Part shown: in pieces, positions 6,911 through 56,421 of the stretch
Numbering within the stretch: position 1 is the stretch's first letter
Layout: each line of letters begins with the position of its first letter
Source of the DNA: Octopus sinensis
Lineage: Eukaryota
Reading direction: 5' to 3'
Assembly (NCBI RefSeq): GCF_006345805.1
Contig: NC_043000.1
Coordinates: 161,758,001-161,822,000 of the forward strand
Length of the DNA stretch: 64,000 nt
The notes under the pieces: generated by a model
The model's input: only the letters and a program-made list of their open reading frames with translations
What the model was told of the DNA's origin: nothing
Database searches by the model: none
Made by a program: the position numbers and the translations under genes

Positions 6911-6960
6911 ATGGCGGTGCCCCAGCATGGCCACAGCTCAATAAGCTGAAACTAGAATCA
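6911..6960 (+). repeat. Orphan CR1/SINE 3' tail
   Basis: GGCGGTGCCCCAGCATGGCCACAG...CTGAAAC. Confidence 0.65.
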
Positions 6961-7136
6961 ATCAATCATATATATATATATGAATTTCATATCCGTAGTT
7001 ATTCTAAACAACGCTGCCTTGGCACTTTTGTTATTAAATCCTGCTGGTCAAGTTTGCAGCATATGTAAATTATTTACGCCAGAAATAGTTTGTCCTTCAT
7101 CTCAAAATAGGTTCTTTACTTTGTAAATTTAATTAA

Positions 7137-7185
7137 GACATAACGTTCTCTGATGAGGCTTGGTAAAGTCGAAACAAGTTATGTC
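7137..7185 (+). ncRNA. Minimal hammerhead-ribozyme-like motif (Penelope-type), degenerate
   Basis: CTGATGA 7150-7156, stem II GGCTT-GGTA-AAGTC, GAAAC 7171-7175, enclosed by complementary GACATAAC/GTTATGTC; cleavage triplet unclear. Confidence 0.5.
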
Positions 7186-7294
7186 AACTGATTATTCATT
7201 CTACATTTATGAAAATTTTTCTAATTTATTGACAGGTTATATTTACACAGTGTGATTAAACATATTTTTACTGAGCGAAATAGCTAGCTAGCTA

Positions 7295-7838
7295 TAGATA
7301 GATAGATAAGTTTCTTTATTGGCCACACAGGGCTGCACACAGATGGGACAAGTTACAAGGTAGAGCTTTTCTTTTGGGGGAGAAAAAAAAAAGGTCGCGT
7401 AGGTTTTCGATCAAAAGGGATCGTAAAAGGGAAAAAAGAACAAAAAAAAGAAAAAAAGAAAAGAAAAGGAAAAGAAAAAAAGAAAAGAAAAAGGAAAAAA
7501 GGAAAAGAAAAAAAGAAAAAAGGGAAAAATAGAAAAGAAAAATGAAAAAAGAAGAAAAAAGAGGCAAAAAGGGGGAGAGGAAAAAAAACGATCAATAGGG
7601 ATCGTGTAACACAGTGTCATGATGTATAGTGTAAAGGGGAAAGCAAGTAAGGTTTATCCGTGGGAAGAAAAGCCTACGAAAAAGACCACGGTAACCTTGG
7701 TCAATATTGTTATATGTTACCACATTTGTTTGCAAGTGGGTAACCCTCTGTTTTCAATTTCTGGGTTCATAGGATTATGCTCAAGGTGGCTTCGTCATTC
7801 ATACGTGCCATCCTTGCTACATTCACCCATCTTTTTTT
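7295..7838 (-). mobile_element. Tx1/L1-clade 3' fragment, copy C (ORF2 end, 3'UTR, AATAAA, (TATC)n tail)
   Basis: Starts at 'KKRWVNVARMARMNDEA', ends GGCCAATAAAGAAAC followed by (TATC)n. Confidence 0.8.
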
Positions 7839-7839
<1 letters not shown>

Positions 7840-7895
<56 letters not shown>

Positions 7896-8435
7896 GGATA
7901 GATGGATGGATGGAGGATGGATGGATGGATAGATAGATAGATAGATAGATAGCTAGATAGATATGTTTCTTTATTAGCCACACAGGGCTGCACACAGATA
8001 GAACAAATTACAAGGTAGAGCTTTTCTTTTGAAGGTATTAAAAAAAATAATATAAAAAAAAAAAAAAAAAAAAAAAAGAAGGGGGAGGTTCGATCAAAAG
8101 GGATCGTAAAAGGAGAGAAAGAGGACGAAAATAGGGGGGTTAAAAAAAAAAAAAAAAAAAAAAGGGGGGGGAGAGGAAAAAAAAACGATCAATAGGGATC
8201 GTGTAACACAGTGTCATGATGTATAGTGTAAAGGGGAAAGCAAGTAAGGTTTATCCGTGGGAAGAAAAGCCTACGAAAAAGACCACGGTAACCTTGGTCA
8301 ATATTGTTATATGTTACCACATTTGTTTGCAAGTGGGTAACCCTCTGTTTTCAATTTCTGGGTTCATAGGATTATGCTCAAGGTGGCTTCGTCATTCATA
8401 CGTGCCATCCTTGCTACATTCACCCATCTTTTTTT

Positions 8436-8437
<2 letters not shown>
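7840..8437 (-). mobile_element. Tx1/L1-clade 3' fragment, copy B (duplication-derived mosaic) with its (TATC)n tail
   Basis: 597-bp period; 5' half matches copy C and 3' half matches copy A. Confidence 0.8.
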
Positions 8438-8439
<2 letters not shown>

Positions 8440-8492
<53 letters not shown>

Positions 8493-8737
8493 GGATAGAT
8501 GGATGGATGGATGGATGGATGGATGGATAGATAGATAGATAGAGTAGATAGCTAGATAGATATGTTTCTTTATTAGCCACACAGGGCTGCACACAGATAG
8601 AAAAAATACAAGGTAGAGCTTTTCTTTTGAAGGTATTAAAAAAATATAAATAAAAAAAAAAAAAAAAAAAAAGGAAGGGGGAGGTTCGATCAAAAGGGAT
8701 CGTAAAAGGAGAGAAGAGGACGAAAATAAGGGGGTTT

Positions 8738-8768
<31 letters not shown>

Positions 8769-9737
8769 AGAGAGAAAAAAAAATGATCAATAGGGATCGT
8801 TATCACAGAATGTCAATATGAAGTGTGAAGGGGAGGACAGGTGAGTTTTACCCGTGAAAGAAAAGCTGCGGAAAAGACCACGGTAACCTCGGTCAATGAA
8901 GTCACATTTTATATTTCTTTTTTTTTTTTTTTTTTTTTTTTTTTGCAAATAAGCAACTCCTGTTTTCGATTTCTGGGTTCATAGGACTATGCTCAGTGGC
9001 TTCGTCATTCATACGTGCCATTCTTGCTACATTCACCCATCTTTTTTTAAAACATTCGCTAGACAAAACTTGCCTCTCTACTCTCACTTTCCTTTTCAAG
9101 TGGTACTTGAAGAAGTTGATGAGAGATTGACCAGAGGGAAGAAGTGTTTGTCTCCATCCTTTCAGTTCAGACGCGTCCACCAGTACATTCTTTCGCCATA
9201 GCCACAAGGATGATGAAAATAGCTCTTCCTTCCGTTTGAAGGAAGGAGGCGTGACAAATTGACGATAGACTCAGCTGATAACCGACTCGTCCCACACGTG
9301 ACAGCAGTTGTTCGACATAAGCCCAAGGTCGGAAATTGTTGACACTGAACGAGTGCTGCAGAACGGTTTCGTCGCTCTGACCGCATCTCGGCAGGTCGGC
9401 CCCGTGTTTTTCTCGAGCCGTGTCTGTAGAGCTTACCCGAACGGGTAGCGCTTCTCGGTAGCACTGCCAGGCCGGGATCTCTGGAGTTGTCCATGGGCCC
9501 TGGCCCGAAAGTCGTCCCGTAACAGGCGGGTCAGGTACTCCTCGTCGACGTCCAGGTTCGCCCCGAGCTCGTCGTCGTACCTCCCCTCCACTAAACCCCT
9601 AAGAATGCTTTGTTGTGTTGAAGTCACTTAAGGTCGACCCAGGACGGCAGAGTGCTTGAGAGCAACGCGACACTCGCGGTGCCATTCGCCCTTCCTCGGC
9701 CTCTTTTTGATCCACGCTGCAGTTCGGTCATGGAGAT
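8440..9737 (-). mobile_element. 5'-truncated Tx1/L1-clade LINE, copy A (ORF2 C-terminal Cys-rich region, 3'UTR, (TATC)n tail)
   Basis: Peptides 'WIKKRPRKGEWHRECRVALKH', 'RGLVEGRYDDELGANL', 'KLYRHGSR', 'SGQSLINFFKYHLKRKVRVERQVLSSECFKKRWVNVARM'; frameshifted. Confidence 0.75.
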
Positions 9738-9740
9738 AGC

Positions 9741-9789
<49 letters not shown>

Positions 9790-9855
9790 GGATAGATAGA
9801 TAGATGGATAGATAGATAGATGGATGGATAGATAGATAGATAGATAGATAGATAG

Positions 9856-10055
9856 GTTTTTGTTCCTTCTCGAGCCATGTCTGGCTCATAAGGGCCGGTT
9901 CCCCAGTTTCCTTGGCGTATAGGTTCCCCACCTGGACGGGACGCTATTACCTTCTACCGGAGCCGCGTGGAGCTTAGGTGTTTCGCTCATAAATACACAC
10001 ATCGCCCGGTCTGAGATTCGAGTCCGATGCTCTAACCACTAGGCCATATGCCTCC
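9856..10055 (-). mobile_element. tRNA-derived SINE family V (V-domain-like), internally deleted, with (CTAT)n tail at 9737-9855
   Basis: Head GGAGGCATATGGCCTAGTGGTTAGAGC; GCGTCCCGTCCAGG core; same family as 21599, 43211 and 59385. Confidence 0.85.
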
Positions 10056-10212
10056 AATAGGTAGGTAGGTACATACATATAATTTTAAAGAGATACTATG
10101 TATATATATATATATATATAATCACTCCATCACTCCTTTTCATGCTGAAGCGTTGTATTTAATGTAATGTTGATTTTTACTTGGAAAGAAAACTGATGTC
10201 CTTCAAAAGTTA

Positions 10213-10591
10213 TACATACATACATACATACAAACATACATACATACATGCATACATACATACATACATACATACACACACATACATACATACATACATA
10301 CATACATACATACATACATACATACATACATGCATGCATTCATACATACATACATACATACATACATACATACATACATACATACATACATACATACATA
10401 CATACATACATACATACATGCATGCATGCATTCATACATTTATACATACATACATACATACATACATTCATACATACATACATACATACATACATACACA
10501 CATACATACATACATACATACATACATAATACATGCACCTACAACATACATACATACATACATACATACAACACATACATACATACATACA

Positions 10592-10623
<32 letters not shown>

Positions 10624-11707
10624 CAGAATACATACATGCATACATACATACATACATACATACATGCATACATACAAACATACATACATACATACATTCA
10701 TACATACATACATACATACATACATACATACATACAACAAACATACATACATAATACATACATGCATTCATACATACAAACATACATACATACATACATA
10801 CATACATTCATACATACATACATACAACATACATACATGCATACATTATGCATATTACATACATACATACATACAACATACATACATACATACATACACC
10901 ATTCATACATACATACATACATGCATACATACATACATACATACATACATACATACATGCATACATACAAACATACATACATACATACATTCATACATAC
11001 ATACATACATACATACATACACACATACATACATAATACATACATGCATTCATACATACATACATACATACATACATTCATACATACATGCATACATACA
11101 TACATGCATTCATACATACATACATACATACATACACACATACACACATACATACATACATACATACATACATACATACATACATTCATACATACATACA
11201 TACATGCATGCATGCATTCATACATACATACATACATTCATACATACATACATACATATATACACACATACATACATACATAATACATACATACATACAT
11301 ACATGCATACATACAAACATACATACATACATACATACATACATACATACATACATACATACATACATACATGCATACATACATACATTCATACATGCAT
11401 ACATACAAACATACATACATACATACATTCATACATACATACATACATACATACATACACACATACATACATAATACATACATGCATTCATACATACATA
11501 CATATATACATACATACATACATTCATACATACATGCATACATACATACATGCATGCATGCATTCATACATACATACATACATACATACATACATACATA
11601 CATAACACACACATACATACATACATACATACATACATACATTCATACATACATACATACATACATGCATGCATACATACATACATACATACATATACAT
11701 ACATACA

Positions 11708-11738
<31 letters not shown>
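10213..11738. repeat. ~1.5 kb (CATA)n tetranucleotide array with variant units
   Basis: Visible; source of the IHTY/MYVC ORFs. Confidence 0.97.
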
Positions 11739-11740
<2 letters not shown>

Positions 11741-12915
11741 GCACTCAAACTTTCATGTCAAAAAGCACACTTACAAAGTTAAAGCGGGACACAAGTGTTT
11801 AATATGCACAGGAAATATGAACACCCACGTATACACAAACGTCAACCTTCTATACCTGTATTATACACGAAAGCAATTCCATAAAGATTGATGCTGGATC
11901 AGAATAAGGGATGAATTAGGGAGAAAAAAAACATGAGGTATGGGAACAAAGGCATTCAACATTATATATCTTTTTCAGAACATGTGTAACCATGAATAAA
12001 GTCGATGCTTCAGAATAAGCAGATATGGCACTAGACTTGGGATTATGCCAAAGTAATTATTTGCAGTGATTGCTAAGGAAATCTTCAAGTTTTTTTTCTT
12101 TATTTATACATTTATATTTATTTACATCTGATTCGTGTATTTAAATATTTGTTTTGTATCTCTTATTTTATAACATTCTATAGAATTATCCTTTGCGAAA
12201 CATCTAACAGATTTGAGGATTGTGTTACATGCGCGCTTATTTGTCCAATAATTTATCTGTTTAGTTAGTTAGTCATTCATTCATATTTTTCTCCGTCAAG
12301 AGGAAAAAACTGAGTTTTGTTAAAAAAAGAAGAAATTGAAGGGAAAGCGAAAATATACCGACATGGTCAGGTCAAGAAACATTATTGGTTGAACGGTTTT
12401 TTTTTTTATGTGTATTAATTGGTTGTCAATAGTAATTGTCTTAGTATCTGTATCTGAGGAACATGTAAAAGATATAATTAAAATGTTTTGAGTTCTTTAG
12501 ACAATAATGATGAAAACAATTCTAATAATAACTGGTAGCAAAAAAAAAAGAGAGAGAGATGAGAAGTCTACAAAGAGATACGAAACGATATGATTTGATA
12601 TTATGAACTGCCGTACAGTCCCTTAAATAAAACAAAACAAACAAACTAATAGGAAAGCCTCTACACGGTCACTGTCCATAATAGGTATATAGTATCCACA
12701 TAATCTATTATCAGAGCCCACAGATTTAGAAGAAATGACACGTTGGGTAATGTAATCTTAGATACACGCGGACTGTAAAGCAAAAAAGAAAAAAAAGACA
12801 GGATGGTTACGACTTGTATGCTTTTAGTTTTAGGCCTGCTTTACCAAGCCTCTTCTGGGCTAAACATGAACATATATAAAAAGGCTGTTCGACCCACTTT
12901 CACCGGTCTTACGGC

Positions 12916-13106: not shown

Positions 13107-14569
13107 AAAAATTACGCCAGTATCGTCATACTCGATCCTCGCTCACACTTCTTGGCGGATTACTTGAAGAAAATGGTGACAATGAATTTAAACAGCAAAA
13201 AAAAACTGAAATTTGGTTTCTTCAGTCTTAAGCAAATATATTACACCTTTTATTTCAGCTGCTAAGCTGATAAAGTTGTCTTGCTGAAAATGTTCTATTC
13301 TTGGTCCATCATCACCTATAAATTTTTCCCGACAATTTTGTCTGTTCCATTCCTATAATGATCACTACCCTTCAACCTTCTGTGCTATCCTTATCTCTCC
13401 ATTGTAATCATTTTATGTAGTGTTTTCTTTTCCTGTAAATCATGTAACAAATAATACAGGCAATCCTTTAGCCTGAAATATTTTCTGATAACACACACAC
13501 ATGTACATATATAAATTCTACAGCATATTTTACCTCCACCAATTTAAGCTCTATTCTAAGAACTCCAGTCTACTAAAACGTTAATCTCATCTGGCTCCCA
13601 ATTCCACTGAAGTGAGGGACTTCCTGTTTCCTATATACAGTGTCCTACCTCTTTGCAGACAATAATAGGAACTGTATTCTTAATTTGTTTATACAATATC
13701 ACCACCTTCCAAGACGATAATAATGTATAAGGACATTTGTGATATTGTGAAAAAAAAAGTGGCAATCAAATCACATCCTACCACTTTTGAAAAAAAAAGG
13801 CGATCCATACTGGGTAATGTAGTCTAAAATAAACTACGTCGAAAGAATGTGGTGGTTTCAACTGGAATTTCTTTCATCATAGGCATGCTCAATCAGAATA
13901 ATATGATGCTAAGCAACAATTTCAACACCACAAGAATCGCAAAATGTCTTCTGCCCACCATCACCACCATAGTTATCTATTGAGCACTATTTACCCTTTG
14001 ATTGTCCCTACTCAATAAAGACGTAAACTCCTTTCAATTCGGTGCCCTTTTGAGTAGTTATCAGTCTATCCAGAAGAGTTTATTTCAGTATGATAGTGAT
14101 CTAAGCGGGATTTTGAAATCAGAATAGAACAACTTTGATCATGAATAAAATATTGTCATCTGAAAATTAACACCAAGGAGCGATGATTTCTAGATGCGTT
14201 TCTTCTTTTGTGCTACGCTAGCATATTTCTTGGAAACCAATTTAGGAATAGTAGATTCTTAATTCTAGAAAATATAGAGGAATATTTCAAACGGAGCTAT
14301 GTCCATTATTTATTTTACAGTTTATCTTCGGATAAGGCGCAGAGCACGTTCAACGTCAGGTGCAATCTACAGGGAAAATGCGTAGATCCAGCTAATTAGC
14401 AGATATAAATGACAATGCAGACTGAAGTAAAGAGAGGGATCAATGTATTTAACTAATTTGGATAGTGGTAATAAAGCTGTTGTCAGAGAAATCATGAGCA
14501 GAAAAGGCCCCCCATGAAGGATTAAAGCAAAAGACTACAGAGCTGTTGCAATACTGTAAATCTGTAAAG

Positions 14570-15187
14570 CGGCGAGCTGGCAGAGACGTTAGCGCGCCGG
14601 GCGAAATGCGTAGCCGTATTTCGTCTGCCGTTACGTTCTGAGTTCAAATTCCGCCGAGGTCGACTTTGCCTTTTATCCTTTTGGGGTCGATTAAATAAGT
14701 ACCAATTACGCACTGGGGTCAGTGTAATCGACTTAATCCGTTTGTCTGTCCTTGTTTGTCCTCTCTGTGTTTAGCCCCTTGTGGGTAGTAAAGAAATAGG
14801 TATTTCGCCCGTCGCTACGTTCTGAGTTCAAATTCCGCCGAAGTCGACTTTGCCTTTCATCCTTTCTGGGTTGATAAAATAAGTACCAGTTATGCACTGG
14901 GGTCGATGTAATCAACTTAATCCCTTTGTTTGTCCTTGTTTGTCCCCTCTATGTTTAGCCCCTTGTGGGCAATAAAGAAATAAGAAACGTTAGCATGTTG
15001 GGTGAAATGCTTAGTGGTATTTCGTCTGCCGTTACTTTCTGAGTTCAAATTCTGCCGAGGTCTACTTTGCCTTTCATCCTTTCGGATTCGATAGATTAAG
15101 TACCAGTTACGTACTGGGGTCGATCTAATCGACTGCCCCGCCTCACCAAAAATTTCGAACCTTGTGCCTAGAGTAGAAAAGAATATT
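14570..15187 (+). mobile_element. Head-to-tail trimer of SINE family M (GCCTTTCATCCTT..GGGGTCGAT..AGTACCAG core, MetaSINE-like)
   Basis: Three units at 14570-14799, 14800-14982 and 14983-15187; B-box-like GAGTTCAAATTCC in each. Confidence 0.85.
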
Positions 15188-15622
15188 GTAAATCTGTATT
15201 GTGTTCCTGAATAATCGTGGATTACTAAACAGCCTCAGGCATGCTACTTTCTGTTTTTATTGTATAGTTGTGAAAATAAGATTAAAAAGCAAATTCGTTC
15301 TGTCTGCCGAATTTCACTCGCTGGCTTTGGTCTTCTCAAGGTTATCTCAATCGACATTTGCCTCAGACGATACGCACTGATTGTGAACCTAACTTGCAAC
15401 ACCAACTTCTCAATCTACTCTATCTTCTTATCTTTCTCTGTGGGGGGGGGCGTGCGTGTGAAACAGTTTACGATATCGAACAACAGTAGTTTACTAATTG
15501 TCCACGAAATTCTTACAAATTTAACACTGAGCATTTTGCAAAAATTCTCAGCAATAATTATTTCCAAGAGTAATGTGTGTGTGTGTGTGTGTGTGTGTTT
15601 ATGTGTGTGTGTGTGTGTGCGT

Positions 15623-17435: not shown

Positions 17436-17741
17436 GTGGAGGCACAATGGCTCAGTGGTTAGGGCAGCAGACTCGCGGTCGGAGGATCGCGGTTTCGATT
17501 CTCAGACCGGGCGTTGTGTGTGTTTATTGAGCAAAAACACCTTAAAGCTCAACGAGTCTCCGGCAATGGATGGTGGCGACCCCTGTTATACTCTTTCGCC
17601 ACAACTTTCTCTCACTCTCTCTTCCTGTTTCTTGAGTAACGTTGCGATGGACTGGCGTCCCGTCCAGCTGGGGGGAACACATGCACCACAGAAACCGGGA
17701 AACCGGGCCCATGAGCCTGGCTGGGCTTGAAAAGGGCGACG
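17436..17741 (+). mobile_element. SINE family V copy with imperfect ~12-bp TSD
   Basis: tRNA-like head, GCGATGGACTGGCGTCCCGTCCAG core; flanks AACGTGTGTTAC / AACGTGTTGTTAC. Confidence 0.85.
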
Positions 17742-21598: not shown

Positions 21599-21906
21599 AT
21601 GGTTTTTCTTTACTTCTCGAGCCTCACCTGGCTCATAAGGGCCGGTTTCCCGGTTTCCTTGGCGTATAGGTTCCCCACCTGGACAGGACGCCGGTCTGTC
21701 GCAGGTGAGCTGAAAGATGCATGAGGAAAGAGTGAGAGAAAGCTGTGGCAAAAGAGTCAGCAGAAGTTCGCCATGACCTTCTGCCGGAGCCGCTTGGAGC
21801 TTAGGTGTTTCGCTCATAAACACACACACCGCCCGGTCTGACATACGAACCCGCGATCCCTCGACCGGGAATCCACTGCTCTAACCACTAGGCCATGTGC
21901 CTCCAT
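21599..21906 (-). mobile_element. SINE family V, full length, 11-bp TSD
   Basis: TSD ATATAATTGAA at 21588-21598 and 21907-21917. Confidence 0.9.
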
Positions 21907-23872: not shown

Positions 23873-24815
23873 ACTTAGATATGTTTCGACCAAAGATTGG
23901 TCCAGGCCATGTCTAACTTAATAGCACCACCAGATAGGATTATTCGAATCCTGTTTAAGTCAAGTTTTGTTTATGGTCCATTCAAGTAGTGAGTTCTTGT
24001 TGGGTGAGTTGTATCCATTTATGGGTGGCTTATCTGGTATTCTTTGAAGGAATCTATCCAGACTCCGTTTAAAGTTGATGGGATCCTTTTCTTCTTTGAT
24101 CTCTTTCAGGACAATGTTAAATAGGGCAGGGCCTGTTGAGGAAAAGAAATTATGTTGCAGTGTACATGTATGCTGTGATCTTGAATTGGGCAGGGGACGT
24201 ATGGCCCGTCCTCCCAGTCTTGGATGAACCTTGAAGCTTACGTTCAGGTCGTTTGGGCAAAGTTGGCGTTATATTCTCCACATCGTATAAATGATCTACC
24301 GCTCACGGCGACGCTGGAGAGAGTAAAGTTTCAAGGCTTTAAGGCGATCCCAATAATCGAGAGCAGCCATGCCTTCAATTCGTTTAGTGACTGGGGTGAC
24401 TCAATCCTTGAGATGTTTTGTCTTGTATGGGGAGACCACAGTGGGCAGCAGTATTCGAGGTGTGGCCGTACAAAGGAGGAGAAAAGTGGTATGATGACAC
24501 CTTGTCCTCTGGACCGGAAAGTTCTTAAGATCCAGGAACTCATCCTACGAGCTATATCGACCTTCTTGTTGATGTGTGCACTCCAACTGAGATCGTCATC
24601 AACAATTACACCCTGGTCTCTGATATTGTTAGAGGCTGTGAGCGGTTCCTCTGAAGGAAGAGAGTATGGCTGTTTTAGTGAGGAATTTCTTCCAAAATGC
24701 ATCACCTCAAATTTTCCCTCGTTCAGTTGCATTTTGTTTCTGTCTGCCCATTGACTCACAGCATATGGATCAGACTGGAGTTGAGTTCGGTCTGCTTCTT
24801 CATTGACGATTTGCT
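23873..24815 (-). mobile_element. 5'-truncated CR1-type LINE (subfamily B), ORF2 C-terminus and tail
   Basis: '[65 protein letters not shown]', later 'GPALFNI..FKRSLDRFLQRIPDKP'; flanked by (TA)n on both sides. Confidence 0.88.
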
Positions 24816-25024
24816 GATAATTATATATATAAATATATATATACATAAAGATGCATGTATATATAAATATATATATACATAAATACATATATATATAATA
24901 TATAAATATAAATAAATATATATATAAATATATATGTATAAATAAATATATATATAAATATTTATATAAATATGTATATCTGTATATGTGTGTATATATA
25001 TAAATATAATTTATATGTATATAA

Positions 25025-25108
<84 letters not shown>

Positions 25109-25659
25109 TATATATATAAATATTTACATTTTCGTCTTTGGATTTGGTTTGCAAGATTCTTTCGTGTGTTGAAGTATATACTGTTGTGCCTGGGGAGAGT
25201 CATTTTCTTTTTGTGCCTTATAATTTAACACACTCACCGGTAAAATTTGCACTTATTTCTTATTTTTATTTTCCTAAAATTTTCGTTGCGTCTTGCAACC
25301 TTTTCAATAGTCTTGACTCTGTCCGTTATTTACACTGCGTTCCCTTTTGTTTGTTTGTGCGCATGTGTGTGGTCCAGTGAGTGTGTGTGCGTGTGTGCCT
25401 ATGCGTGCATGCATGTACGTATGTATGTATGTGTGTATGTATGTATGTATGCATGTATGTATGTATGTATGTATGCATGTGTGTGTATACATGTGTGTGT
25501 ATGCATATGTATGTATGTTTGTATGTGTGTGCATCTGTATGCATTCTGCATATTCATGTGGTTGCATGTCCGTGTTTGTGTGTATTTTCTACGTATGTGT
25601 GTGTGATCGTGTGTTTGTATATGTATGTACCTCTGTCTCCTTGTGTGTGCTTTTCTTTG

Positions 25660-26399: not shown

Positions 26400-27240
26400 A
26401 CTAACCAATGTTGGGTTACTGACTTCATAATCACAGCCATCTCCTGGAGAGGATGTAGTCAATCTGGCACGTGTATCCACCAGATAGGTAATCAAGTGGT
26501 TGGCTGTTTTTCTAAAGTTAGTGTAGTAGACCATCAAATCCATTGCACCACATAACTCCTGCAGCCTTGTTCCTTCTTCATTTCTAGAATCCAAACTGTA
26601 ACTCAATGTACACCATGGAATTCTTAAGAGTGCTGCTCACCAGCCATAATGATAAACTTACCATTCATCATTAGGGTAATCTGCAAAAGGCTTCATAAAA
26701 TCAGTTCTAGTCATCTACCAGTCTAGATTGAGTGGGATATGCAGAAATAGACATCTGAAGGCGGAAAGCTGGCAGAAACGTTAGCACACCAGGTGAAATG
26801 CTTAGCGGCATTTCGTCTGTCGTTATGTTCTGAGTTCAAATTCCGCCAAGGTCGACTTTACCTTTCATCCTTTTGGGGTCGATAAATTAGGTACCAGTTA
26901 TGCACTGGGGTCAATGTAATCGACTTCATCCCTTTGTCTATCCTTGTTTGTCCCCTCTATGTTTAGCCCCTTGTGGGCAATAAAGAAATAAGAAATAGAC
27001 ATCTGAGCTTAGCTGTCCTATCACACTCTGCCACAATCACCTTATCTATCCATTTCTCACTCCAAAGTATTCCTTCATTTCCAGCTCATCGTATCATTGT
27101 TGCCCATCCACAAGAATTTATGCCTTTGTTTTTTGTTATCATCTTCTGTTGTCTCCCCTCGTGCACTTGAGCATTTCAACACATCTGCCTTAGTTTTCAT
27201 AGTGCACGTACCGAATGTGGATTCTGTAAAGTTATGAACT
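26400..27240 (-). mobile_element. Old RTE LINE endonuclease remnant, interrupted by a SINE
   Basis: 'SEKWIDKVIV', 'ISAYPTQ', 'RNEEGTRLQELCGAMDLMVYYTNFRKTANHLITY' parallel the RTE at 35849-36078. Confidence 0.7.
26759..26990 (+). mobile_element. SINE family M monomer with Tx1-like tail and 16-bp TSD
   Basis: TSD AGAAATAGACATCTGA at 26743-26758 and 26991-27006; ends CAATAAAGAAATA. Confidence 0.9.
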
Positions 27241-29199: not shown

Positions 29200-29625
29200 T
29201 TAACATCCGCTTTCCATGCTAGCATGGGTTGGACGATTTTGACTGAGGGCTGGTGAACCAGATGGCTGCACCAGGCTCCAATCTTGATCTGGCAGAGTTT
29301 CTACAGCTGGATGCCCTTCCTAACGCCAACCACTCCGAGAGTGTAGTGGGTGCTTTTACGTGCCACGGGCATGGGGCTAGTCAGGCGGTACAGGCAATGA
29401 CCTCGCTCGAATCTTTTTACACATGCCACCGGCACAGGTGCCAGTAAGGCGACGCTGGTAACGATCACGCTCAAATGGTGCCTTTTACGTGCCACCGGCA
29501 CAGAAGCCAGTTAGCCACTCTGGCGATGATCACACTCGGATGATGCTCTTGGCACCCTACTAGCATGGGCACAAGTGCCAGTAAGGCGACGCTGGTAACG
29601 ATCACACTCAAATGGTGCCTTTCTC
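29165..29625 (-). mobile_element. RTE 3'UTR fragment with (GAT)n tail
   Basis: GCTGGATGCCCTTCCTAACGCCAACC motif and (CAT)n as in 32655-33266. Confidence 0.85.
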
Positions 29626-30660: not shown

Positions 30661-30779
30661 CCTCACAGAGGTAAAATGGCTGAGTTCCTCTCAAGCGCTG
30701 GGCCTGGTGTTGGGGTTAGGTTGTTATTCAGTAGCCATTTAAGGATTGTATCAATGCAGTATCAGCTAGTAGCTCATTC

Positions 30780-32654
30780 CTAGATTTTTGCAATACCCTC
30801 TTTAATGTATCTACAAAACATTCCACTAGTCCATTCAATCTCGGATGGTATGGCAGAGTAATAATATACTCCATTGCATGCATTTTGCAGAAGTTTTTAA
30901 ATTCCTTCGACGTGAACTGTGTTCCGTTATCAGACAGTGTAGTGTCTGGGATGCCATATCATGCAAAAAGTTCGTACAGAAATTCCATTGTTACTTTCGT
31001 TGGCATCCCACATTTACATATTTGTGGTCATTTCATGTAACTATCCACAACTATTAGGTAACAACCTCCATTTAACAGTCCTGCAAAGTCTATGTGTAAT
31101 CTGGACCAAGGTATGTCAGTCTTGGGCCTAGACTGAATTTTTATAGGTGGTGCTTTTGCCACCAATTTTTCAATATCCTGATCCATATTCGACCAGTAAA
31201 CGTAGTTCCTCATCAGTGCTTTCATTCTCACAATTCCTGGATGTCTCAAGTGGAATTCTTTTAGCATACGATTTTGCAAAGAAACAGGTATTACAACCTT
31301 CTGAGCATACATAAGTATGTCATCGTATATCGAATACCATTTCAAAACTGCATGATGCTCGGCTACATGAATTTTTCTATTTGTTTCTGACTTCACTATT
31401 TTTATCATTATTATGGACACATCCATCTCTGCTTTAATTTTTATTTCCTCTAAAGTGACAGATAGTTTGCATACTATGTTGTAGAGTATATTTCTTATTT
31501 CAATTCCAGCTTTTAATGCCAATATTGCTGTGTCCTCTAACATTTAGGTATCACTCTTGACAGTCCATCTGCCTGTCCCAGTTTTTTCAATGGTAGAAAT
31601 TCCATCTTAAAGTCATAATTTGGCAGGATCATCCCCCATCATTGCAATCAGTTGGTTATATGCAAGGGGATACCCTTTTTTCAATCTGCAAATTGACAAC
31701 AATGGGCGGTAATCTGTCTGCAGACTGAATTTCCTTCCATGTATGAATTTGCGAAATGCTCTTCACCACGAAATTAATGGCTAATGCCTTCTCCTCAATT
31801 TGGTTGTAGTATTTTTCAGCCATTAACAATGAATGTGAAACATGAGCGATGGGTTTTAAGCTACCATTTTCACACTTGTGTAAAATTACCGTTCCTATAT
31901 CACTTCCACTAGCATCTGATGCTACAACTATTTTTAAATTTGGATCAAAGTGCGATAATGACAGTTCTGATGTTAAAACTTTTTTTATTTCTTCAAATGC
32001 TTTTTGGCACCTGTCTGACCAACTCCATTTAATGTCATTTTCCAATAGGTTGTTTAAGGGTGCTCTTAGCTCATGCATATTCAGTATGTATGCTTAGTAA
32101 TAGATTGTGAGCCCCAAGAATGCTTGTAATATTGTAATAGTTATCAGGAGAGACATATTTTTTATTGCAGTCCATCTTAAAGGTTTAGGCCTGCAACCAT
32201 TTTTATCGATAACTTGCCCTAAATACTTTAATTCTGGCATGAATAATTCGCATTTCCCTCGCTAAGTTTAAATCTATATTCCTTTATTCTTTCAAGGACA
32301 TTTTTAACATGTTCCTCATGCTGGCCTTGAGTCTCACTTTTTATGAGTATGTCATCCAAGTAAGCTATAGCGAAATCCGTATCAGCAAGAATAATGTCCA
32401 TCACCTGCTGAAAAATACCAGGTACCACTTTTATCCCAATAGGAAGTCAATTGAATTTATATAGACCTTTGTTTATCATTAATAATTTCGAACATTCCTC
32501 CTTGACTTGTAACGGTAAATACACCTCCGACAAGACCAGCTCTAAAAAAGTTTTTCTTTATTAAGTTTCGCAAAAATTTCCTCCAGACTTGGTATTAAGG
32601 AATTGTATGTCCTCAAATATTCATTCAATCCTGTTAAAAAGTCAGCACATACTC
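30780..32654 (-). mobile_element. Ty3/Gypsy pol, 3' part (RT, RNase H, integrase), degenerate
   Basis: 'RVCADF', 'IAYLDDIL', 'VASDASG..IGTVI..PIAHVS', 'HLRHPGIVRMKALMRNYVYW..PWSRLHIDFAG', 'SDNGTQFTSKEF'. Confidence 0.9.
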
Positions 32655-35600
32655 ATCATCATCATCATCATCATCGTTTAGCGTCCGTTTTCCATGCTAG
32701 CATGGGTTGGACGGTTCTACTGGGGTCTGTGAAGCCAGAAGTCTTCATCAGGCCCAGTCAAATCTGGCAGTGTTTCTACGGCTGGATGCCCTTCCTAACG
32801 CCAACCACTCCGTGAGTGTAGTGGGTGCTTTTTACGTGCCACCCGCACTGGTGCCAGACAGAGCTGGCAAACGGCCACGAACGGATGGTGCTTTTTATGT
32901 GCCACCGGCACGAGGGCCAGGCGAGGCTGGCAACGGACACGAAACGGGGCGGTGCTGGCAACGGTCGCGAAACGGAAAGTTCTCTTACATGCCACCGGCA
33001 CTGGTAACACATCTGCAATTTCCATTGATCGATTTCCATTGATCGATTTCGATTCTGATCGTCACTTGCCTCAACGGGTCTTCACAAGCAGAGTTTTGAC
33101 ATGCCACCGGCACTGGTAGCACATCCGCAATTTCCATTGATCGATTTCGATTCTGATCCTCACTTGCCTCATCACGTCTTCACAAGTAGAGTTTTGTGTC
33201 CCAAGAAGGGAAGGTATGCATACGTAGGCTGGCTCCATCCCATGTAGAAGGCCACGGGTTATGGACTCACTTGTCCTGCCGGGTCTTCTCGCGCACAGCA
33301 CACTTCCAGAGGTCTCGGTCTCTAGTCATTTCCTCAGTGAGACCTAAAGTTCGAAGGTCGTGCTTCACCACCTCATCCCAGGTTTTCCTGGGTCTGCCTC
33401 TTCCACAGGTTCCCTCAACCGCTAGGGTGTGGCACTTTTTCACACAACTATCTTCATCCATTCTCGCCACATGACCATACCAGTGCAAACGTCTCTCTTG
33501 CACACCACAACTGATGCTTCTTAGGTCCAACTTTTCTCTCAAGGTACTTACACTCTGCCGAGTGTGAGTACCGGCATTACACATCCATCGGAGCATACTG
33601 GCTTCATTTCTAGCGAGCTTACGCATATCCTCAGCAGTCACGGCCCATGTTTCACTGCCATGTAGCATGGCTGTTCGTACACACGCATCATACAGTCTGC
33701 CTTTCACTCTGTGCGAGAGGCCTTTTGTCACCAGCAGAGGTAAGAGCTCTCTGAACTTTGCCCAAGCTATTCTTACTCTAGCAGTTACACTTTCAGCACA
33801 CCCGCCCCCGCTGCTGACTTGGTCACCTAGGTAACGGAAACTATCAACTATTTCTAGTTTTTCTCCCTGGAAAGTGACGGAAGTTGGTCTCAGAGCATTT
33901 TCAGTGTTTATTGTTCCTGAGCATCTGCCACATACAAAAACCATCTTCCTAGTTAGCCTTCCTTTGACATTGCTGCATCTCTTATGTGTCCATAGCTTAC
34001 ACTTGGTGCATCTTATAGAGTTTCTACCTACACCTTTTCTACAGATCGAGCAGGGCCATCTACCTGAAGGTGTTTGTGATTTGTCTACCTTCCTACTGAT
34101 TACGACTTTGGTTTTAGCTAGATTGACTCTGAGGCCCTTCGATTCTAATCCTTGTTTCCACACCTGAAACTTCTCCTCCAGTTCTGATAGCGACTCAGCA
34201 ATTAGAGCAAGGTCATCAGCATAGAGGAGCTCCCAAGGGCATCCTGTCTTGAATTCCTCCGTTATTGCCTGGAGGACTATGATAAATAGGAGGGGGCTGA
34301 GTACTGAGCCTTGGTGGACTCCTACCTCTACCCGGAATTCTTCACTGTACACATTTCCAACCCTCACCCTACTAGCGGCGTCCCTGTACATGGCCCGCAC
34401 AGCTCTCACTAACCATTCATCTATCCCTAGTTTCCTCATTGCCCACCAGATAAGGGATCGGGGGACCCTGTCGAAGGCTTTCTCCATGTCAACAAAAGCC
34501 AGGTACAGGGGCTTATCTTTGGCTAGGTATTTCTCCTGCAGCTGCCTTACCAGGAATATAGCATCAGTAGTACTTTTCCCTGGCACAAACCCAAACTGCA
34601 TCTCATCTAAACTAACTCTCTCTCTAATTAGTTGGGCTATGACCCTCTCCGTAACCTTCATCACCTGGTCCAACAGCTTGATACCTCTGTAGTTATTTGT
34701 ATCTAGGGCATCACCTTTACCTTTGTAGCAGTTGACTATTATACTGCTACACCAGTCATTGGGTATGACCCCTTTGTGTATCACCTGATTAACTATATGG
34801 GTGACTAGGCTATAGCCGACACTACCAGACATTTTGAGCATCTCTGCAGTGATTCCTGATGGGCCTGGGGCTTTCCGTCTTCATGCTTCTAATTGCCTTA
34901 GCTACCACGGAACTATCAACTCGGATAGCTGGTCCCTCTGTTGGGTCAACATTCGGCAGACTCTCTTTATCCCATTCATTTTCTTCATTCAGCAACCTTT
35001 CATAGTGGCATCTCCAAACCTCTCTCTTTGCATCCTCATTTAGCGCAAGTGAACCATCTTCCATGCAAACACACTTCTCTCCTACCACATCATGATTCTC
35101 TCTCACACACTGTCTTGCAACACGAAACACCTCCAGTCTTTGGTCCTCACGGCGCAGAACATTGGCAAATTTTTTCTTATCTGCTTCCCCTCTGGCTAAA
35201 TAAACCTGTCTCCTAGCTTCTCTTTTGGCAGTCTGATACAATCCCCTGCTACCCCCATTTTTCCAGACCTTCCAAGCCTGTCTCTTTTCTCTAATAGCCC
35301 TGTCTACAATATTGTTCCACCACCACGTATTCTAGGTCGAGAGGGGACTTTGCACCAGCCACAGATCTGGTCAGTGGCTCTCAGCAGGTTGTCCCTTAGA
35401 AACGTCCAGCTGTCTTCTACCCCCTGTGATGCTCTATCCCCTTCTACTTCGTCAGAGGCTTCAAGTAATATGTCCCTAAATCTCTGTCCATTTGCAGGAT
35501 CTTTAAGCTTCCAGATCCTTCTTCTCCATATTTGTCGTCTTCTGGTTGTCCTCCTAGTCCTGATCCTAAAGTCACTAACTACCAGTCTATGTTGTGGGGT

Positions 35601-36078
35601 ACATTCTTCACCTGGGAAGGTTTTGGCATTTATAAGCAGCTATCTCTCCCTTTGCCTTGTAAGGATGTAGTCAATTTGGCTGGTATGTTGGCCCGATTGG
35701 TAAGTGACTAGGTGGCTGGTAGGTTCCTGAAGTTAGTGTTGCAAATCATAAGATTATTTGCATCGCAGAACTCCAGCAGCCTGGTTCCCTCCTCGTTGCG
35801 GGAGCCATAGCCATAGCCTCCATGTACGCCATGGAAGCCCCCAGCATGTCATCCAACGTGACCATTGAAGTCACCAGCCACAAAGATAAGGTCTCTGTCG
35901 TTCGTCAACGAGGTAGTCTGCAGTAGAGTGTCATAGAATTGGTCTTTCTGTCCATCGGGTAGCCCCGACTGAGGAGCATAGGCTGATATAATGGTTGCTA
36001 AACTATGATGAAGCACTAATCTAATCTTAAGTATTCTGTCACATACTCTGATTACCTCAATTACTTTATCTACCCATT
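32655..36078 (-). mobile_element. 5'-truncated RTE-clade LINE (3.4 kb): partial APE, RT, long 3'UTR, (GAT)n tail
   Basis: 'IISAYAPQ..IFVAGDFNGHVG', 'NYRGIKLL', 'QFGFVPGKSTTDAIF', 'LAFVDMEKAFDRVP', 'GVHQGSVLSPLLF', 'LLYADDLAL'. Confidence 0.95.
33267..34841 (-). CDS. RTE ORF2 fragment (524 aa): reverse transcriptase with PHD-like finger
   Basis: Uninterrupted ORF with RT motifs including YADD; upstream portion frameshifted. Confidence 0.9.
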   Translation of the reverse strand: MLKMSGSVGYSLVTHIVNQVIHKGVIPNDWCSSIIVNCYKGKGDALDTNNYRGIKLLDQVMKVTERVIAQLIRERVSLDEMQFGFVPGKSTTDAIFLVRQLQEKYLAKDKPLYLAFVDMEKAFDRVPRSLIWWAMRKLGIDEWLVRAVRAMYRDAASRVRVGNVYSEEFRVEVGVHQGSVLSPLLFIIVLQAITEEFKTGCPWELLYADDLALIAESLSELEEKFQVWKQGLESKGLRVNLAKTKVVISRKVDKSQTPSGRWPCSICRKGVGRNSIRCTKCKLWTHKRCSNVKGRLTRKMVFVCGRCSGTINTENALRPTSVTFQGEKLEIVDSFRYLGDQVSSGGGCAESVTARVRIAWAKFRELLPLLVTKGLSHRVKGRLYDACVRTAMLHGSETWAVTAEDMRKLARNEASMLRWMCNAGTHTRQSVSTLREKLDLRSISCGVQERRLHWYGHVARMDEDSCVKKCHTLAVEGTCGRGRPRKTWDEVVKHDLRTLGLTEEMTRDRDLWKCAVREKTRQDK

Positions 36079-37510
36079 TTATTTTTTGGTTTTTCTTTGC
36101 ATAAACAGTTGGTGATGCCCATTCTGAATAATCAGTCTTTTCTATAACTCCAAGCTTTTCAAGTCTATCCAATTCCTCATTGACTTGATTCAACACCACG
36201 AAAGGTACAGCTCACTTCTTCGGTTTAAATACCAATACAGCATTTTCTTTCACTTGTGATTTTACTTTTGTCTTGGTGCACCAACCAAATTCTTCAGAAA
36301 GAACATCAGGAAAAGGCTTTTTAATTTCTTTTTTAAAATCCTCCAATGTCTTATTTGAACTGGTGTAAGAACTGTTTATATAATTACACAAAGTATTTAT
36401 GAGGTCACATAAATTAAATAGTTCCATCCAGTCTGTGCAAAATAGGTTTGTCATATTTTTTAATACAAAAACTTTGAATTAGAAAGTTTTTCCACGAAAT
36501 TTCACCTCACTTATTATTTCACCCAAAAATCACAATTGTTTCCCTGAAATACTTCTCTCAATTTTCGAAGGTTTTCCAATATAAGCTTTCCTATTTTTAT
36601 CCATGCATCATTGTTAGTCATTGTCCAGTTGTAGTCTCATATTCACATCATTTTTATAGAGACTAATTTTCTTTTAATTCCTCGTTTTGCATTTGCATTG
36701 GCAATACTTCTTTTCTCAAATTTTTTTCGTTCAACCTTTTTTTGTTTCACCCAACAATGTGAATTCTTATGTCCGATTTTTCCACATCCCAAACATTTTA
36801 AATTTTTAAAAGGACAGTTTCTTTTAAAATGTATTTCTCCATACCCATAGCAAGGTTTAGGTCTTGACTGTTGCTTTTCTTTTTTCTTATCTGTTACAGG
36901 TCGACACGTATGTATATTTAAATAATCGTTTTCAATTTTTTTATGTGTCCTGTCATAAATTTATTCATTCTTCAACCACTGCCTTTAGAGTTAATTTCAA
37001 ATCCTGTTCTAGTTTTGTCAATATCTAAGCCCATATCTCCACAGCTTTGCTTGTAATTAATCCTTGTACAAAGATTAGACATTTGAACATATCTGAAATT
37101 AATTCATTTAGCTTAAATTTTTCACATGCCCTATTTACGATTCCAGGATATGTGACAAAATCTTCAGTTCCTCTTTTTTTCAAATTCAAGCACTCCCAGC
37201 AAATACTAAATAGTGAACTTCTTTCACTGAATATTTTAGATAACAGGTTAATTGTTTCCTCAAAACAAATTTCAGATGGTTTTTCTCAGCAGGATGTAAT
37301 TACAATACTTTCCATGTTCTGTGGGTGATAATTTCCTTAGAAGAAGTCGTACCTTCTTCTCGTCTGTCCAGTTTCTACATTCTTCTTTGAAGATTCCTTC
37401 ATACCTTCAGAAAAATATGCAGAAAATGTAATCCCTTCTTCTGGATTATAAGTAAATTCTTCAATTGAATTATAAACCTGAAGTGTTTTTGGACAGCAAC
37501 AATAATTCCA
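36079..37510 (-). mobile_element. Ty3/Gypsy gag-protease-RT start, degenerate
   Basis: 'EFTYNPEEGITF..WTDEKKVRLLLRKL..FKCLIFVQG' gag; 'EELDRLEKLGVIEKTDYSEWASPTVYAKK'; no LTRs recognised. Confidence 0.85.
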
Positions 37511-43210: not shown

Positions 43211-43503
43211 TGTTTGTTCCTTCTTGAGCCATGCCTGGTTCATAAGGGCCGTTTTCCCGGTTTCCTTGACGTATAGGTTGCCCACTTGGACGGGACGCCG
43301 GTCCGTCGCAGGTGAGCTGCAAGGAAAGAGTGAGAGAAAGTTGTAGCGAAAGAGTCAGCAGAAGATCGCCATTACCTTCTGCCGGAACCACGTGGAGCTT
43401 AGATGTTTTGCTCATAAACACACATATCGCCCGGTCTGAGATTCAAACCCGCAGTCCCTTGACCACGAGTCCGCTGCTCTAACCACTAGGTCATGTGCCT
43501 CCA
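43211..43503 (-). mobile_element. SINE family V, full length, 12-bp TSD
   Basis: TSD CAATTCCAATTA at 43199-43210 and 43504-43515. Confidence 0.9.
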
Positions 43504-53290: not shown

Positions 53291-53321
53291 ATATATATAT
53301 ATATATATATATACATACATA

Positions 53322-56355: not shown

Positions 56356-56421
56356 TAGATAAACTTAGATATGTTTCGACCAATGATTGGTCCAGGCCAT
56401 GTCTAACTTAATAGCACCACC
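56351..56421 (-). mobile_element. 70-bp CR1 subfamily B 3' stub
   Basis: Near-identical to 23873-23930; tail unit ATCTAAGTTT duplicated; abuts (TA)n. Confidence 0.85.

What the first reader, a model, noticed from the sequence alone, without database searches (positions are those of the whole stretch)
26759..26990. SINE family M carries the 3' end of the Tx1 element
SINE tail CCTTGT---TTGTCCCCTCTATGTTTAGCCCCTTGTGGGCAATAAAGAAA (26942-26988) aligns with the Tx1 terminus CCTTGTAACTTGTCCCATCTGTGTGCAGCCCTGTGTGGCCAATAAAGAAA (reverse complement of 7311-7360). Manual count is 40 of 47 aligned bases with one 3-bp gap, and both end at the same point. The SINE has a clean 16-bp TSD, consistent with target-primed reverse transcription. 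L1-clade partners usually recognise only poly(A), so a sequence-specific Tx1-derived SINE tail is uncommon. Both candidate partners are in this one window.
Basis: partly seen in the sequence, partly recalled or inferred. Interest (0 to 1): 0.75.

Follow-up and report, generated by a model that had tools for sequence, protein, structure and literature searches.

The report
SINE sharing a Tx1-type LINE tail
A short parasitic repeat (SINE) in this octopus-like genome ends in the same roughly 50 bases as an L1/Tx1-type LINE lying nearby, and the pairing recurs in the paper nautilus Argonauta, so this LINE most likely copies the SINE; that is an ordinary mechanism, but the partner clade is an unusual one.

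Summary
SINE 26942-26988 aligns with the reverse complement of 7311-7360 at 40 of 47 bases with one 3-bp gap. Both alignments end at the element termini (z = 10.6 against shuffles). The 16-bp target-site duplication (TSD) is exact.

The "Tx1 element" has no open reading frame in the window. Window 9733-8565 (-) is nevertheless a frameshifted ORF2 C-terminus plus 3' UTR of an L1-superfamily LINE. Relatives carry APE endonuclease, RT and zf-RVT domains. Two 5'-truncated copies follow it head-to-tail, separated by (TCTA)n.

In an RT tree the lineage groups with a fish LINE inserted in U2 snRNA genes (Keno-like, Tx1 clade) and not with human L1. Bootstrap support is 76%.

In Argonauta hians, a near-intact 5.8-kb copy with a 17-bp TSD ends in the same motif as seven neighbouring SINEs. 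Two LINEs of unknown origin, from metagenome assemblies, keep at least the core of the motif (CTTGTGGCCAAT).

The best reading is a stringent-type SINE/LINE pair with a Tx1-clade partner. Trans-mobilisation is inferred, not shown. A shared stem-loop is not supported statistically. I found no description of a Tx1-tailed tRNA SINE in the searchable literature; Repbase and Dfam could not be checked. Verdict: a new member of a known kind, of moderate interest.

The parts
26759..26990 (+). SINE copy (232 bp). It has a tRNA-promoter-like head (box A-like at 26781-26793, box B-like GAGTTCAAATTCC at 26832-26844), a central domain shared with Argonauta SINEs, and a LINE-type tail.
   Evidence: The boxes were seen by eye only; ARAGORN and Rfam give no tRNA call.
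26743..26758 (+). 5' copy of the 16-bp target-site duplication AGAAATAGACATCTGA.
26991..27006 (+). 3' copy of the 16-bp target-site duplication. Its first 7 bases (AGAAATA) repeat the SINE's last 7 bases.
26934..26990 (+). LINE-derived tail of the SINE (...CCTTGTTTGTCCCCTCTATGTTTAGCCCCTTGTGGGCAATAAAGAAATA).
14569..14798 (+). Second full SINE copy with the same tail (87.8% identical to the 26759 copy). It is the first unit of a three-SINE chimera.
14799..14982 (+). Third SINE copy with the same tail, 5'-truncated at about position 49 (90.2% identical).
8565..9733 (-). LINE copy C. It comprises a frameshifted ORF2 C-terminus (about 9717-9004, with the zf-RVT/CCHC region) plus a ~420-nt 3' UTR ending ...GGCTAATAAAGAAAC.
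7966..8435 (-). LINE copy B, 5'-truncated 17 codons before the ORF2 stop. Its 5' half is identical to A and its 3' half nearly identical to C, so it is an unequal-crossover recombinant.
7311..7838 (-). LINE copy A, 5'-truncated. The ORF2 stop is at 7769-7767. The terminus 7311-7360 is the one cited in the finding.
7839..7965 (-). (TCTA)n array between copies B and A. It starts exactly where the LINE tail ends.
8436..8564 (-). (TCTA)n array between copies C and B.
9734..9855 (-). (CTAT)n array directly upstream of copy C. The whole LINE array sits in a (TCTA)n context.

Best explanation
The SINE at 26759-26990 is a non-autonomous retroposon whose last ~55 bases were taken from the 3' end of an L1-superfamily LINE, most likely of the Tx1 clade.

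Proposed mechanism:
1. Pol III transcribes the SINE from its tRNA-like head.
2. The LINE's ORF2 protein (APE endonuclease, reverse transcriptase, C-terminal CCHC zinc finger) accepts the SINE RNA because it carries the LINE's own terminal motif, ...YCTGTGT..GSCCCTTGTGGSYAATAAAGAAAT(CTAT).
3. The endonuclease nicks an A/T-rich target.
4. The RNA 3' end pairs with a few bases of the nicked strand and primes reverse transcription (target-primed reverse transcription, TPRT).
5. A staggered second nick produces a 10-17-bp target-site duplication.

This lineage does not use poly(A). Copies end in the specific motif, followed in some families by a microsatellite grown from the terminal TCTAT. It therefore behaves as a stringent-type LINE.

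Shown here: the tail homology, the TSDs, the identity of the LINE, and recurrence in a second genus. Inferred: recognition of the tail by ORF2p and mobilisation in trans.
For: 1. Tail identity is 40/47, anchored at both termini, z = 10.6. There are six tails in the window, three on SINEs and three on LINE ends.
2. The LINE identity is established. Window 9717-9004 (-) matches the C-termini of RVT_1 + zf-RVT proteins. Relatives have Exo_endo_phos + RVT_1 + zf-RVT. The best PDB relative is human L1 ORF2p at 9e-69, against 5e-16 for R2.
3. Clade: the NJ RT tree places the lineage next to a U2-snRNA-specific, Keno-like LINE. Human L1 is excluded in 151/200 bootstraps.
4. Independent replicate in Argonauta hians. 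A full-length LINE lies at L004 6886-12650 with a 17-bp TSD, ORF1, and an ORF2 with a single stop. It ends ...GGCCCTTGTGGCTAATAAAGAAATC. All seven SINE copies in the same 22 kb end ...GGCCCTTGTGGCTAATAGAGAAATC.
5. The motif is kept in full at the 3' end of L002. Its core, CTTGTGGCCAAT, is kept in L010. The proteins encoded by these two loci are about 50-56% identical to the window's ORF2 remnant. The last 35 nt are 57-76% identical between LINEs from different loci, against 46-59% for the 200 nt upstream.
6. TSD lengths are similar for SINEs and LINE: 16, 12, 10 and 17 bp. The TSD start shows microhomology to the element's end.
7. No other LINE end in the window matches the tail.
Against: - No experiment shows that this ORF2p uses the tail.
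- No intact LINE copy is present in the window.
- The window species has only three SINE tails and effectively two independent LINE tails, so no genome-wide consensus, copy number or age comparison was possible.
- In the window, SINE and LINE tails differ at 7 of 47 positions, so the copies seen are not the exact master pair.
- The predicted hairpin has only 4 bp, one compensatory pair, and fold z-scores from -1.4 to +1.6.
- The conserved AATAAA could be kept in the LINE as a polyadenylation signal rather than for RT binding.
- Tx1 placement rests on a distance tree with one inferred Tx1 reference and one L1 reference, at 76% bootstrap.
Confidence: 0.7

Rival explanations
1. The tail homology is real, but the partner LINE belongs to the L1 superfamily outside the Tx1 clade proper, for example a separate protostome L1-like lineage. 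The mechanism is the same; only the label differs.
For: Bootstrap support for grouping with the Keno-like LINE is only 76%. Only one Tx1 reference and one L1 reference were available, and the Tx1 reference was itself inferred from its U2 target. RT identity to the Keno-like LINE is 33-37%, against 28-29% to human L1, which is a modest gap. No database names were available to help.
Against: The tree topology favours Tx1. ORF1 has a weak CCHC knuckle and no Transposase_22 match. Published RT phylogenies and annotations of molluscs and Octopus list Tx1 / L1-Tx1 as the L1-superfamily clade present (PMC10294476, PMC13282606).
Confidence: 0.2
2. The tail is a historical relic. The SINE picked up the L1/Tx1 end once, but its amplification was driven by another LINE (RTE, CR1 or Dong), or the shared part is no longer what the enzyme recognises.
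For: Octopus genomes carry very active RTE, CR1 and Dong-R4 LINEs (PMC9115989, PMC13282606). SINE subfamilies in the window carry other tails as well. Window SINE and LINE tails differ at 7 of 47 positions.
Against: The tail is kept at the very 3' end of every copy in two genera. TSDs of SINE and LINE are similar in length (16 and 17 bp). The Argonauta LINE is nearly intact and sits among seven SINEs with near-identical tails. No other LINE end in the window or in L004 matches the tail.
Confidence: 0.1
3. The direction is reversed, or the pairing is an artefact of nesting. Either the LINE acquired its end from the SINE by template switching, or a SINE fragment simply inserted next to a LINE end.
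For: The reverse transcriptase acting here does switch templates, as shown by three SINEs within one TSD at 14569-15188.
Against: Only the last ~55 bases are shared, never the SINE head or centre. The motif is the terminus of a full-length LINE bounded by its own 17-bp TSD. It also ends the related LINE L002 completely, and its core ends L010. All three window copies have it at the same distance from the ORF2 stop, apart from a variable low-complexity stretch in the 3' UTR.
Confidence: 0.05
4. The similarity is chance, or convergence between two T-rich ends that both carry a polyadenylation signal.
For: Both ends are pyrimidine-rich and contain AATAAA.
Against: None of 5000 shuffles reaches the score (z = 10.6). 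Blastn E = 5e-7. The pairing was replicated independently in Argonauta at E = 1e-9.
Confidence: 0.01

Closest known systems
UnaSINE1 / UnaL2 (eel), the experimentally proven stringent-type SINE/LINE pair (Kajikawa and Okada 2002, as cited in PMC3747384)
   Same: A tRNA-type SINE carries the last tens of bases of its LINE. There is no poly(A). The terminus carries a short repeat that can slip, (TGTAA)n there and TCTAT/(TCTA)n here.
   Different: The partner there is in the L2 clade, with a demonstrated stem-loop and demonstrated trans-mobilisation. Here the partner is L1/Tx1-type, the stem-loop is unproven and nothing has been tested experimentally.
ZmSINE2 and ZmSINE3 with LINE1-1_ZM, and SINEX-3_CR with L1-1_CR: the three SINEs with L1-clade tails known in 2012 (PMC3747384)
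   Same: The partner is an L1-superfamily LINE with a conserved, sequence-specific 3' end, instead of poly(A)-only recognition.
   Different: Those are from plants and a green alga, belong to the L1 clade proper, and most end in poly(A). This one is from an animal, is Tx1-like and has no poly(A).
SINEU with Tx1-Mar in crocodilians (Kojima 2015, PMC4494074)
   Same: SINEs proposed to be mobilised by Tx1-clade LINEs.
   Different: That link rests on shared target preference (Mariner-N4_AMi) and shared U1/U2-derived heads, not on a shared 3' tail. SINEU heads come from snRNA, not tRNA.
Keno, Kibi and Koshi: target-specific Tx1-clade LINEs (Kojima and Fujiwara 2004, as summarised in PMC4494074)
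   Same: They are the nearest identifiable relatives in the RT tree. They form head-to-tail arrays, and Kibi and Koshi are associated with microsatellites.
   Different: The Keno-like reference here ends in poly(A) and always sits in U2 snRNA genes. The octopod LINE and its SINEs are dispersed in unrelated targets and end in a specific motif.
Octopus SINEs OR1, OR2 and OK (Ohshima and Okada 1994) and the 'tRNA-Core / tRNA-Deu / unclassified' SINEs of octopus annotations (PMC8967140, PMC13282606)
   Same: Abundant tRNA-type SINEs of octopods. The family here may well be one of them.
   Different: I could not obtain their sequences. I found no LINE partner stated for them in the papers read.

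Membership tests
SINE (tRNA-type, SINE2) | Short non-coding element present in many copies | tested here: met
   The element is 232 bp. There are three copies with this tail and at least five further fragments sharing the centre in 64 kb. Seven copies lie in 22 kb of Argonauta.
SINE (tRNA-type, SINE2) | Head derived from tRNA with internal pol III boxes A and B | tested here: inconclusive
   A box B-like GAGTTCAAATTCC and a box A-like TTAGCACACCAGG are visible, and the B-box region aligns to the MIR B box. ARAGORN and Rfam report no tRNA.
SINE (tRNA-type, SINE2) | Flanked by target-site duplications from retroposition | tested here: met
   Exact 16-bp TSD. A 12-bp TSD flanks the three-SINE chimera. 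One Argonauta copy has a 10-bp TSD.
Stringent-type SINE/LINE pair | SINE 3' end homologous to the 3' end of a LINE in the same genome, both ending at the same point | tested here: met
   40/47 in the window. 84% over 63 nt in Argonauta.
Stringent-type SINE/LINE pair | LINE 3' end conserved within the LINE lineage beyond the rest of the 3' UTR | tested here: met
   In 9 of 10 pairs the last 35 nt are more alike than the upstream 200 nt. Between LINEs of different loci the figures are 57-76% against 46-59%. The exception is L002 with L010, at 57% against 59%. The motif is present in the window, L004 and L002, and its core in L010.
Stringent-type SINE/LINE pair | Conserved stem-loop in the shared tail | tested here: inconclusive
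   RNAalifold gives only a 4-bp hairpin (GSCC/GGSY) with one compensatory pair. A longer imperfect hairpin is possible in most sequences, but fold z-scores are not significant.
Stringent-type SINE/LINE pair | LINE proteins mobilise the SINE in trans, dependent on the tail | not testable with these tools
   This needs a retrotransposition assay.
L1 superfamily LINE | ORF2 with an N-terminal APE endonuclease, an RT and a C-terminal Cys-His motif | tested here: met
   Exo_endo_phos + RVT_1 + zf-RVT in relatives and in the Argonauta copy. The window keeps only the zf-RVT end. Human L1 ORF2p is the best solved match.
Tx1 clade | RT domain groups with Tx1-clade references rather than with L1 | tested here: met
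   The NJ tree places the lineage as sister to a U2-specific, Keno-like LINE, and human L1 is excluded in 151/200 bootstraps. Support is moderate: one reference per clade, and the Tx1 reference was inferred from its target.
Tx1 clade | Target-specific insertion (true of many members, not all) | tested here: not met
   SINE and LINE copies lie in unrelated targets. There is only a tendency towards (TCTA)n or own-tail arrays and tandem arrays. This feature is not obligatory for the clade.
CORE-SINE superfamily | Central domain homologous to the CORE of MIR | tested here: not met
The reference was not curated, so this is a weak test.

The most novel reading that the evidence does not exclude
Octopod Tx1-type LINEs are a stringent-type lineage within the otherwise poly(A)-dependent L1 superfamily. 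They recognise a conserved ~40-nt 3' motif, carry no poly(A), and are the engine behind a large share of the octopus-specific SINE expansion. That would make this the first animal tRNA-SINE/Tx1 pair defined by a shared tail.
Probability: 0.45. Interest if true: 0.6.

Novelty: new member of a known kind. Interest (0 to 1): 0.5.

Why it matters
SINEs make up about a tenth of octopus genomes. In the latest Octopus vulgaris annotation almost all recently active SINE families (893 of 900) are "unclassified", and the annotation names no LINE partner for them (PMC13282606). Naming an L1-Tx1 LINE as the partner of an abundant octopod SINE subfamily gives a concrete, testable driver for that expansion.

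It also adds an animal case to the debate over whether sequence-specific 3'-end recognition is ancestral in the L1 superfamily. Only three L1-tailed SINEs were known in 2012, all from plants or algae (PMC3747384).

The mechanism itself, a SINE borrowing a LINE tail, is textbook.

Tried and rejected
- **ORF and Pfam scans of 7300-10300.** No ORF or domain was found in any single frame. The LINE identity emerged only from a multi-frame composite protein query.
- **Exact look-up of the window's RTE-like ORF.** It is not on record, so the species could not be named.
- **Metagenome scan for the tail pattern.** No hits.
- **Full-text search for tail and SINE strings.** No hits.
- **Database names as a way to separate Tx1 from L1.** All relatives are unnamed or "hypothetical". 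The supplement of Kojima 2015 is not held.
- **tRNA detection in the SINE head.** ARAGORN and Rfam report nothing.
- **Shared stem-loop.** Only a 4-bp hairpin with no statistical support.
- **First NJ run.** It used a distance correction that produced NaN values, so I repeated it with Poisson distances.
- **More distant LINE relatives (L005, L007).** No clear tail motif was seen.
- **L001, L003, L008 and L009.** These contigs end before the LINE terminus.

Full report
**1. The observation**

The SINE at 26759-26990 (+) is 232 bp long. It is bounded by an exact 16-bp duplication, AGAAATAGACATCTGA, at 26743-26758 and 26991-27006. Its last 47 bases (26942-26988) align with the reverse complement of 7311-7360 at exactly 40 of 47 positions with one 3-bp gap. 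Both sequences stop at AATAAAGAAA. The score is 10.6 sd above 5000 shuffles and none reaches it. In-window blastn gives E = 5e-7. A profile built from the tails finds six tails in the 64 kb. Three sit on SINE bodies (ending at about 26989, 14981 and 14797) and three on the other element (7310, 7965 and 8564 on the minus strand).

**2. What the "Tx1 element" is**

No ORF of 100 aa or more with any domain lies in 7300-10300. Read on the minus strand, the region contains (CTAT)n at 9855-9734, followed by three head-to-tail units. Each unit ends ...GGCYAATAAAGAAAC and runs straight into (TCTA)n.

A composite query made of ORFs from several frames hit three proteins with RVT_1 + zf-RVT domains. Their last ~250 residues can be followed through all three frames of 9733-8985. 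Single-frame tblastn still gives E = 3e-30 for 9717-9004. The three units are therefore:
- **Copy C (8565-9733):** a decayed ORF2 C-terminus plus a ~420-nt 3' UTR.
- **Copies B (7966-8435) and A (7311-7838):** both begin 17 codons before the ORF2 stop, which lies at 7769-7767 in A.

B has the 5' half of A and the 3' half of C. It is therefore an unequal-crossover product. The array represents two insertions, both in a (TCTA)n context.

**3. Which kind of LINE**

Relatives of the three proteins include full-length 1150-aa proteins with Exo_endo_phos + RVT_1 + zf-RVT, and a protein from the octopod Argonauta hians. The best solved relative is human L1 ORF2p, at 9e-69 against 5e-16 for R2. This places the element in the L1 superfamily.

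Database names gave no help in separating Tx1 from L1, so I needed a Tx1 reference. One distant hit, P0215 from the fish Metynnis, lies in tandem arrays. There, every copy ends in poly(A) followed by the U2 snRNA segment ATCTGTTCTTATCAGT, and Rfam finds U2 genes alongside. This is the defining behaviour of Keno, a Tx1-clade LINE (PMC4494074).

I built a neighbour-joining tree of the RT domain with 58 sequences and 456 columns. The outgroup was the window's own RTE-like RT. The human L1 sequence was taken from the alignment printed. The octopod group is sister to the Keno-like clade, and human L1 falls in a separate basal clade. The octopod-plus-Keno clade excludes human L1 in 151 of 200 bootstraps. 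Further points:
- RT identity is 33-37% to the Keno-like LINE, 28-29% to human L1 and 25-27% to the outgroup.
- ORF1 of the Argonauta copy has a weak CCHC knuckle and no L1-type Transposase_22 match.
- Published RT phylogenies list Tx1 as the L1-superfamily clade in molluscs (PMC10294476). The O. vulgaris annotation lists L1-Tx1 and no plain L1 (PMC13282606).

Tx1 is therefore the likely clade, with moderate support.

**4. Independent replicate**

The Argonauta locus L004 holds a full-length copy at 6886-12650, bounded by a 17-bp TSD, TATTTTTAAAATTTGTA. It has ORF1 at 7120-8550 and an ORF2 with EN, RT and zf-RVT interrupted by one stop. It ends ...TCTGTGTCGGCCCTTGTGGCTAATAAAGAAATC. Seven SINE copies in the same 22 kb all end ...TTCGGCCCTTGTGGCTAATAGAGAAATC. 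The LINE end matches the SINE at 84% over 63 nt, E = 1e-9. The Argonauta SINE shares the central domain and tail with the window SINE but has a different head.

Two LINE ends from metagenome assemblies keep at least part of the motif:
- L002 ends ...GGGCCCTTGTGGCCAATAAAAGAAATC followed by (ATT)n.
- L010 ends ...CCTCTTGTGGCCAAT.

Between LINEs from different loci, the last 35 nt are 57-76% identical, against 46-59% for the 200 nt upstream. The terminal stretch is the more conserved in every pair except L002 with L010. The tail is thus the true terminus of the LINE, and it is conserved over LINEs whose proteins share only about half of their residues with the window's ORF2 remnant.

**5. How it most likely works**

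The SINE RNA is presumably made by pol III from the tRNA-like head. Box A-like and box B-like sequences are visible, although ARAGORN and Rfam give no tRNA call. The RNA carries the LINE's terminal motif and is taken as a template by the LINE's ORF2 protein.

Several features fit target-primed reverse transcription by an L1-type enzyme:
- The TSD of the window SINE begins with AGAAATA, the same seven bases that end the SINE.
- In Argonauta, both the LINE and a SINE end in GAAATC followed by a TSD starting TAT.
- TSDs of 10-17 bp occur for both SINEs and the LINE.

No copy has poly(A). In the window LINE the terminal TCTAT has grown into (TCTA)n of about 125 bp, and new copies have landed in it. 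Tandem arrays of relatives occur in an ENA assembly, and runs of consecutive gene models in Patella suggest the same there.

The tail homology, the TSDs and the LINE identity are shown here. Recognition of the tail and mobilisation in trans are inferred from the established behaviour of stringent-type pairs (PMC3747384).

**6. Stem-loop test**

RNAalifold on 13 tails predicts only a 4-bp hairpin (GSCC-CUUGU-GGSY) with one compensatory pair. A longer imperfect hairpin, pairing UCUGUGU with AAUAAAGA, can be drawn for most sequences. No fold is better than shuffles; z-scores run from -1.4 to +1.6. The 3' side never varies, so covariation cannot be judged. The result is inconclusive.

**7. Comparison with what is known**

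SINEs that share tails with LINEs have been known since the 1990s. They are common for CR1, L2 and RTE but rare for L1: three cases among more than 800 L1-clade LINEs, all in plants or a green alga (PMC3747384). The known Tx1-linked SINEs (SINEU) are tied to Tx1-Mar by target preference and shared heads, not by tails (PMC4494074). My searches found no paper describing a Tx1-type tail on a tRNA SINE. In the latest O. vulgaris annotation, 893 of the 900 recently active SINE families are unclassified (PMC13282606). Repbase, Dfam and SINEBase could not be consulted, so prior description there cannot be excluded. I could not test whether the family is one of OR1, OR2 or OK. A CORE label is not supported by the weak test I could run.

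**8. Limits**

- The window's species is unknown. The octopod assignment is inferred from the Argonauta matches.
- Only three SINE tails and two independent LINE tails are available from that genome.
- The window LINE copies are dead fragments.
- The clade test is a distance tree with few references.
- Only the few LINE ends present in the window and in the fetched loci could be compared with the SINE tail.

**9. Verdict**

It is a new member of a well-known kind of system (a stringent-type SINE/LINE pair) with an unusual partner clade, and it is of moderate interest.

Noticed in passing
window 14555-15200 (+): Three SINE copies lie head-to-tail inside a single 12-bp TSD, TGTAAATCTGTA (14555-14566 and 15189-15200). 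They are a full copy, a copy starting at about position 49, and a copy starting at about position 16. The third has a variant tail, ...AACCTTGTGCCTAGAGTAGAAAAGAATAT, which by eye resembles the Argonauta tail CCTTGTGCCTAATAGAGAAAT. This looks like reverse-transcriptase template switching between SINE RNAs within one insertion event.
   Followed up: partly
window 7311-9733 (-): LINE unit B is a mosaic: its 5' half is identical to unit A and its 3' half nearly identical to unit C. This points to unequal crossing-over within the (TCTA)n-separated array.
   Followed up: yes
window 9856-10030 (-), 59386-59687 (+), 43213-43503 (-), 21604-21905 (-), 17495-17735 (+): A second, unrelated tRNA-like SINE family (GGAGGCACATGGCCTAGTGGTTAGAGCA...GAGAAGGAACAAAAA) with an A-rich end. 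The copy at 9856 is internally deleted and abuts the (CTAT)n array.
   Followed up: partly
window 33267-34841 (-), with 34825-35639 (-) upstream: A 524-aa ORF with an RVT_1 domain and a weak, sub-threshold PHD-finger match (21.9 bits against a cut-off of 24). Its C-terminus looks RTE-like by eye. It lies between Gypsy-type pol fragments at 30731-32446 and 35852-37285, apparently a LINE nested in an LTR element. Tandem 63-bp and 72-bp repeats lie just downstream (32824-32943, 29424-29623).
   Followed up: no
window 53196-55390 (-), 56407-57285 (+) and 24334-24800 (-): Fragments of LINEs that look CR1/L2-like by eye (endonuclease and RT motifs in stop-to-stop ORFs). The one piece scanned against Pfam, 24334-25203 (-), gave no RT hit. 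None of their ends matches the SINE tail.
   Followed up: no
window 10212-11737: A very long (ATAC)n microsatellite, about 386 units. Many other long di- and tetranucleotide arrays occur across the window.
   Followed up: no
L005/L006 (ENA ERZ21867824 ctg122906l) and the Patella caerulea gene models SNE40_003393 to SNE40_003415: More distant relatives of the LINE form tandem arrays of full-length copies, with a period of 6596 bp in L005. The run of consecutive Patella gene models suggests the same arrangement there.
   Followed up: partly
L011/L012 (Metynnis hypsauchen CM115301.1): A tandem array of a Keno-like LINE. Each copy ends in poly(A) and is followed by the same 16-nt piece of U2 snRNA, next to U2 and U5 snRNA genes.
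   Followed up: yes
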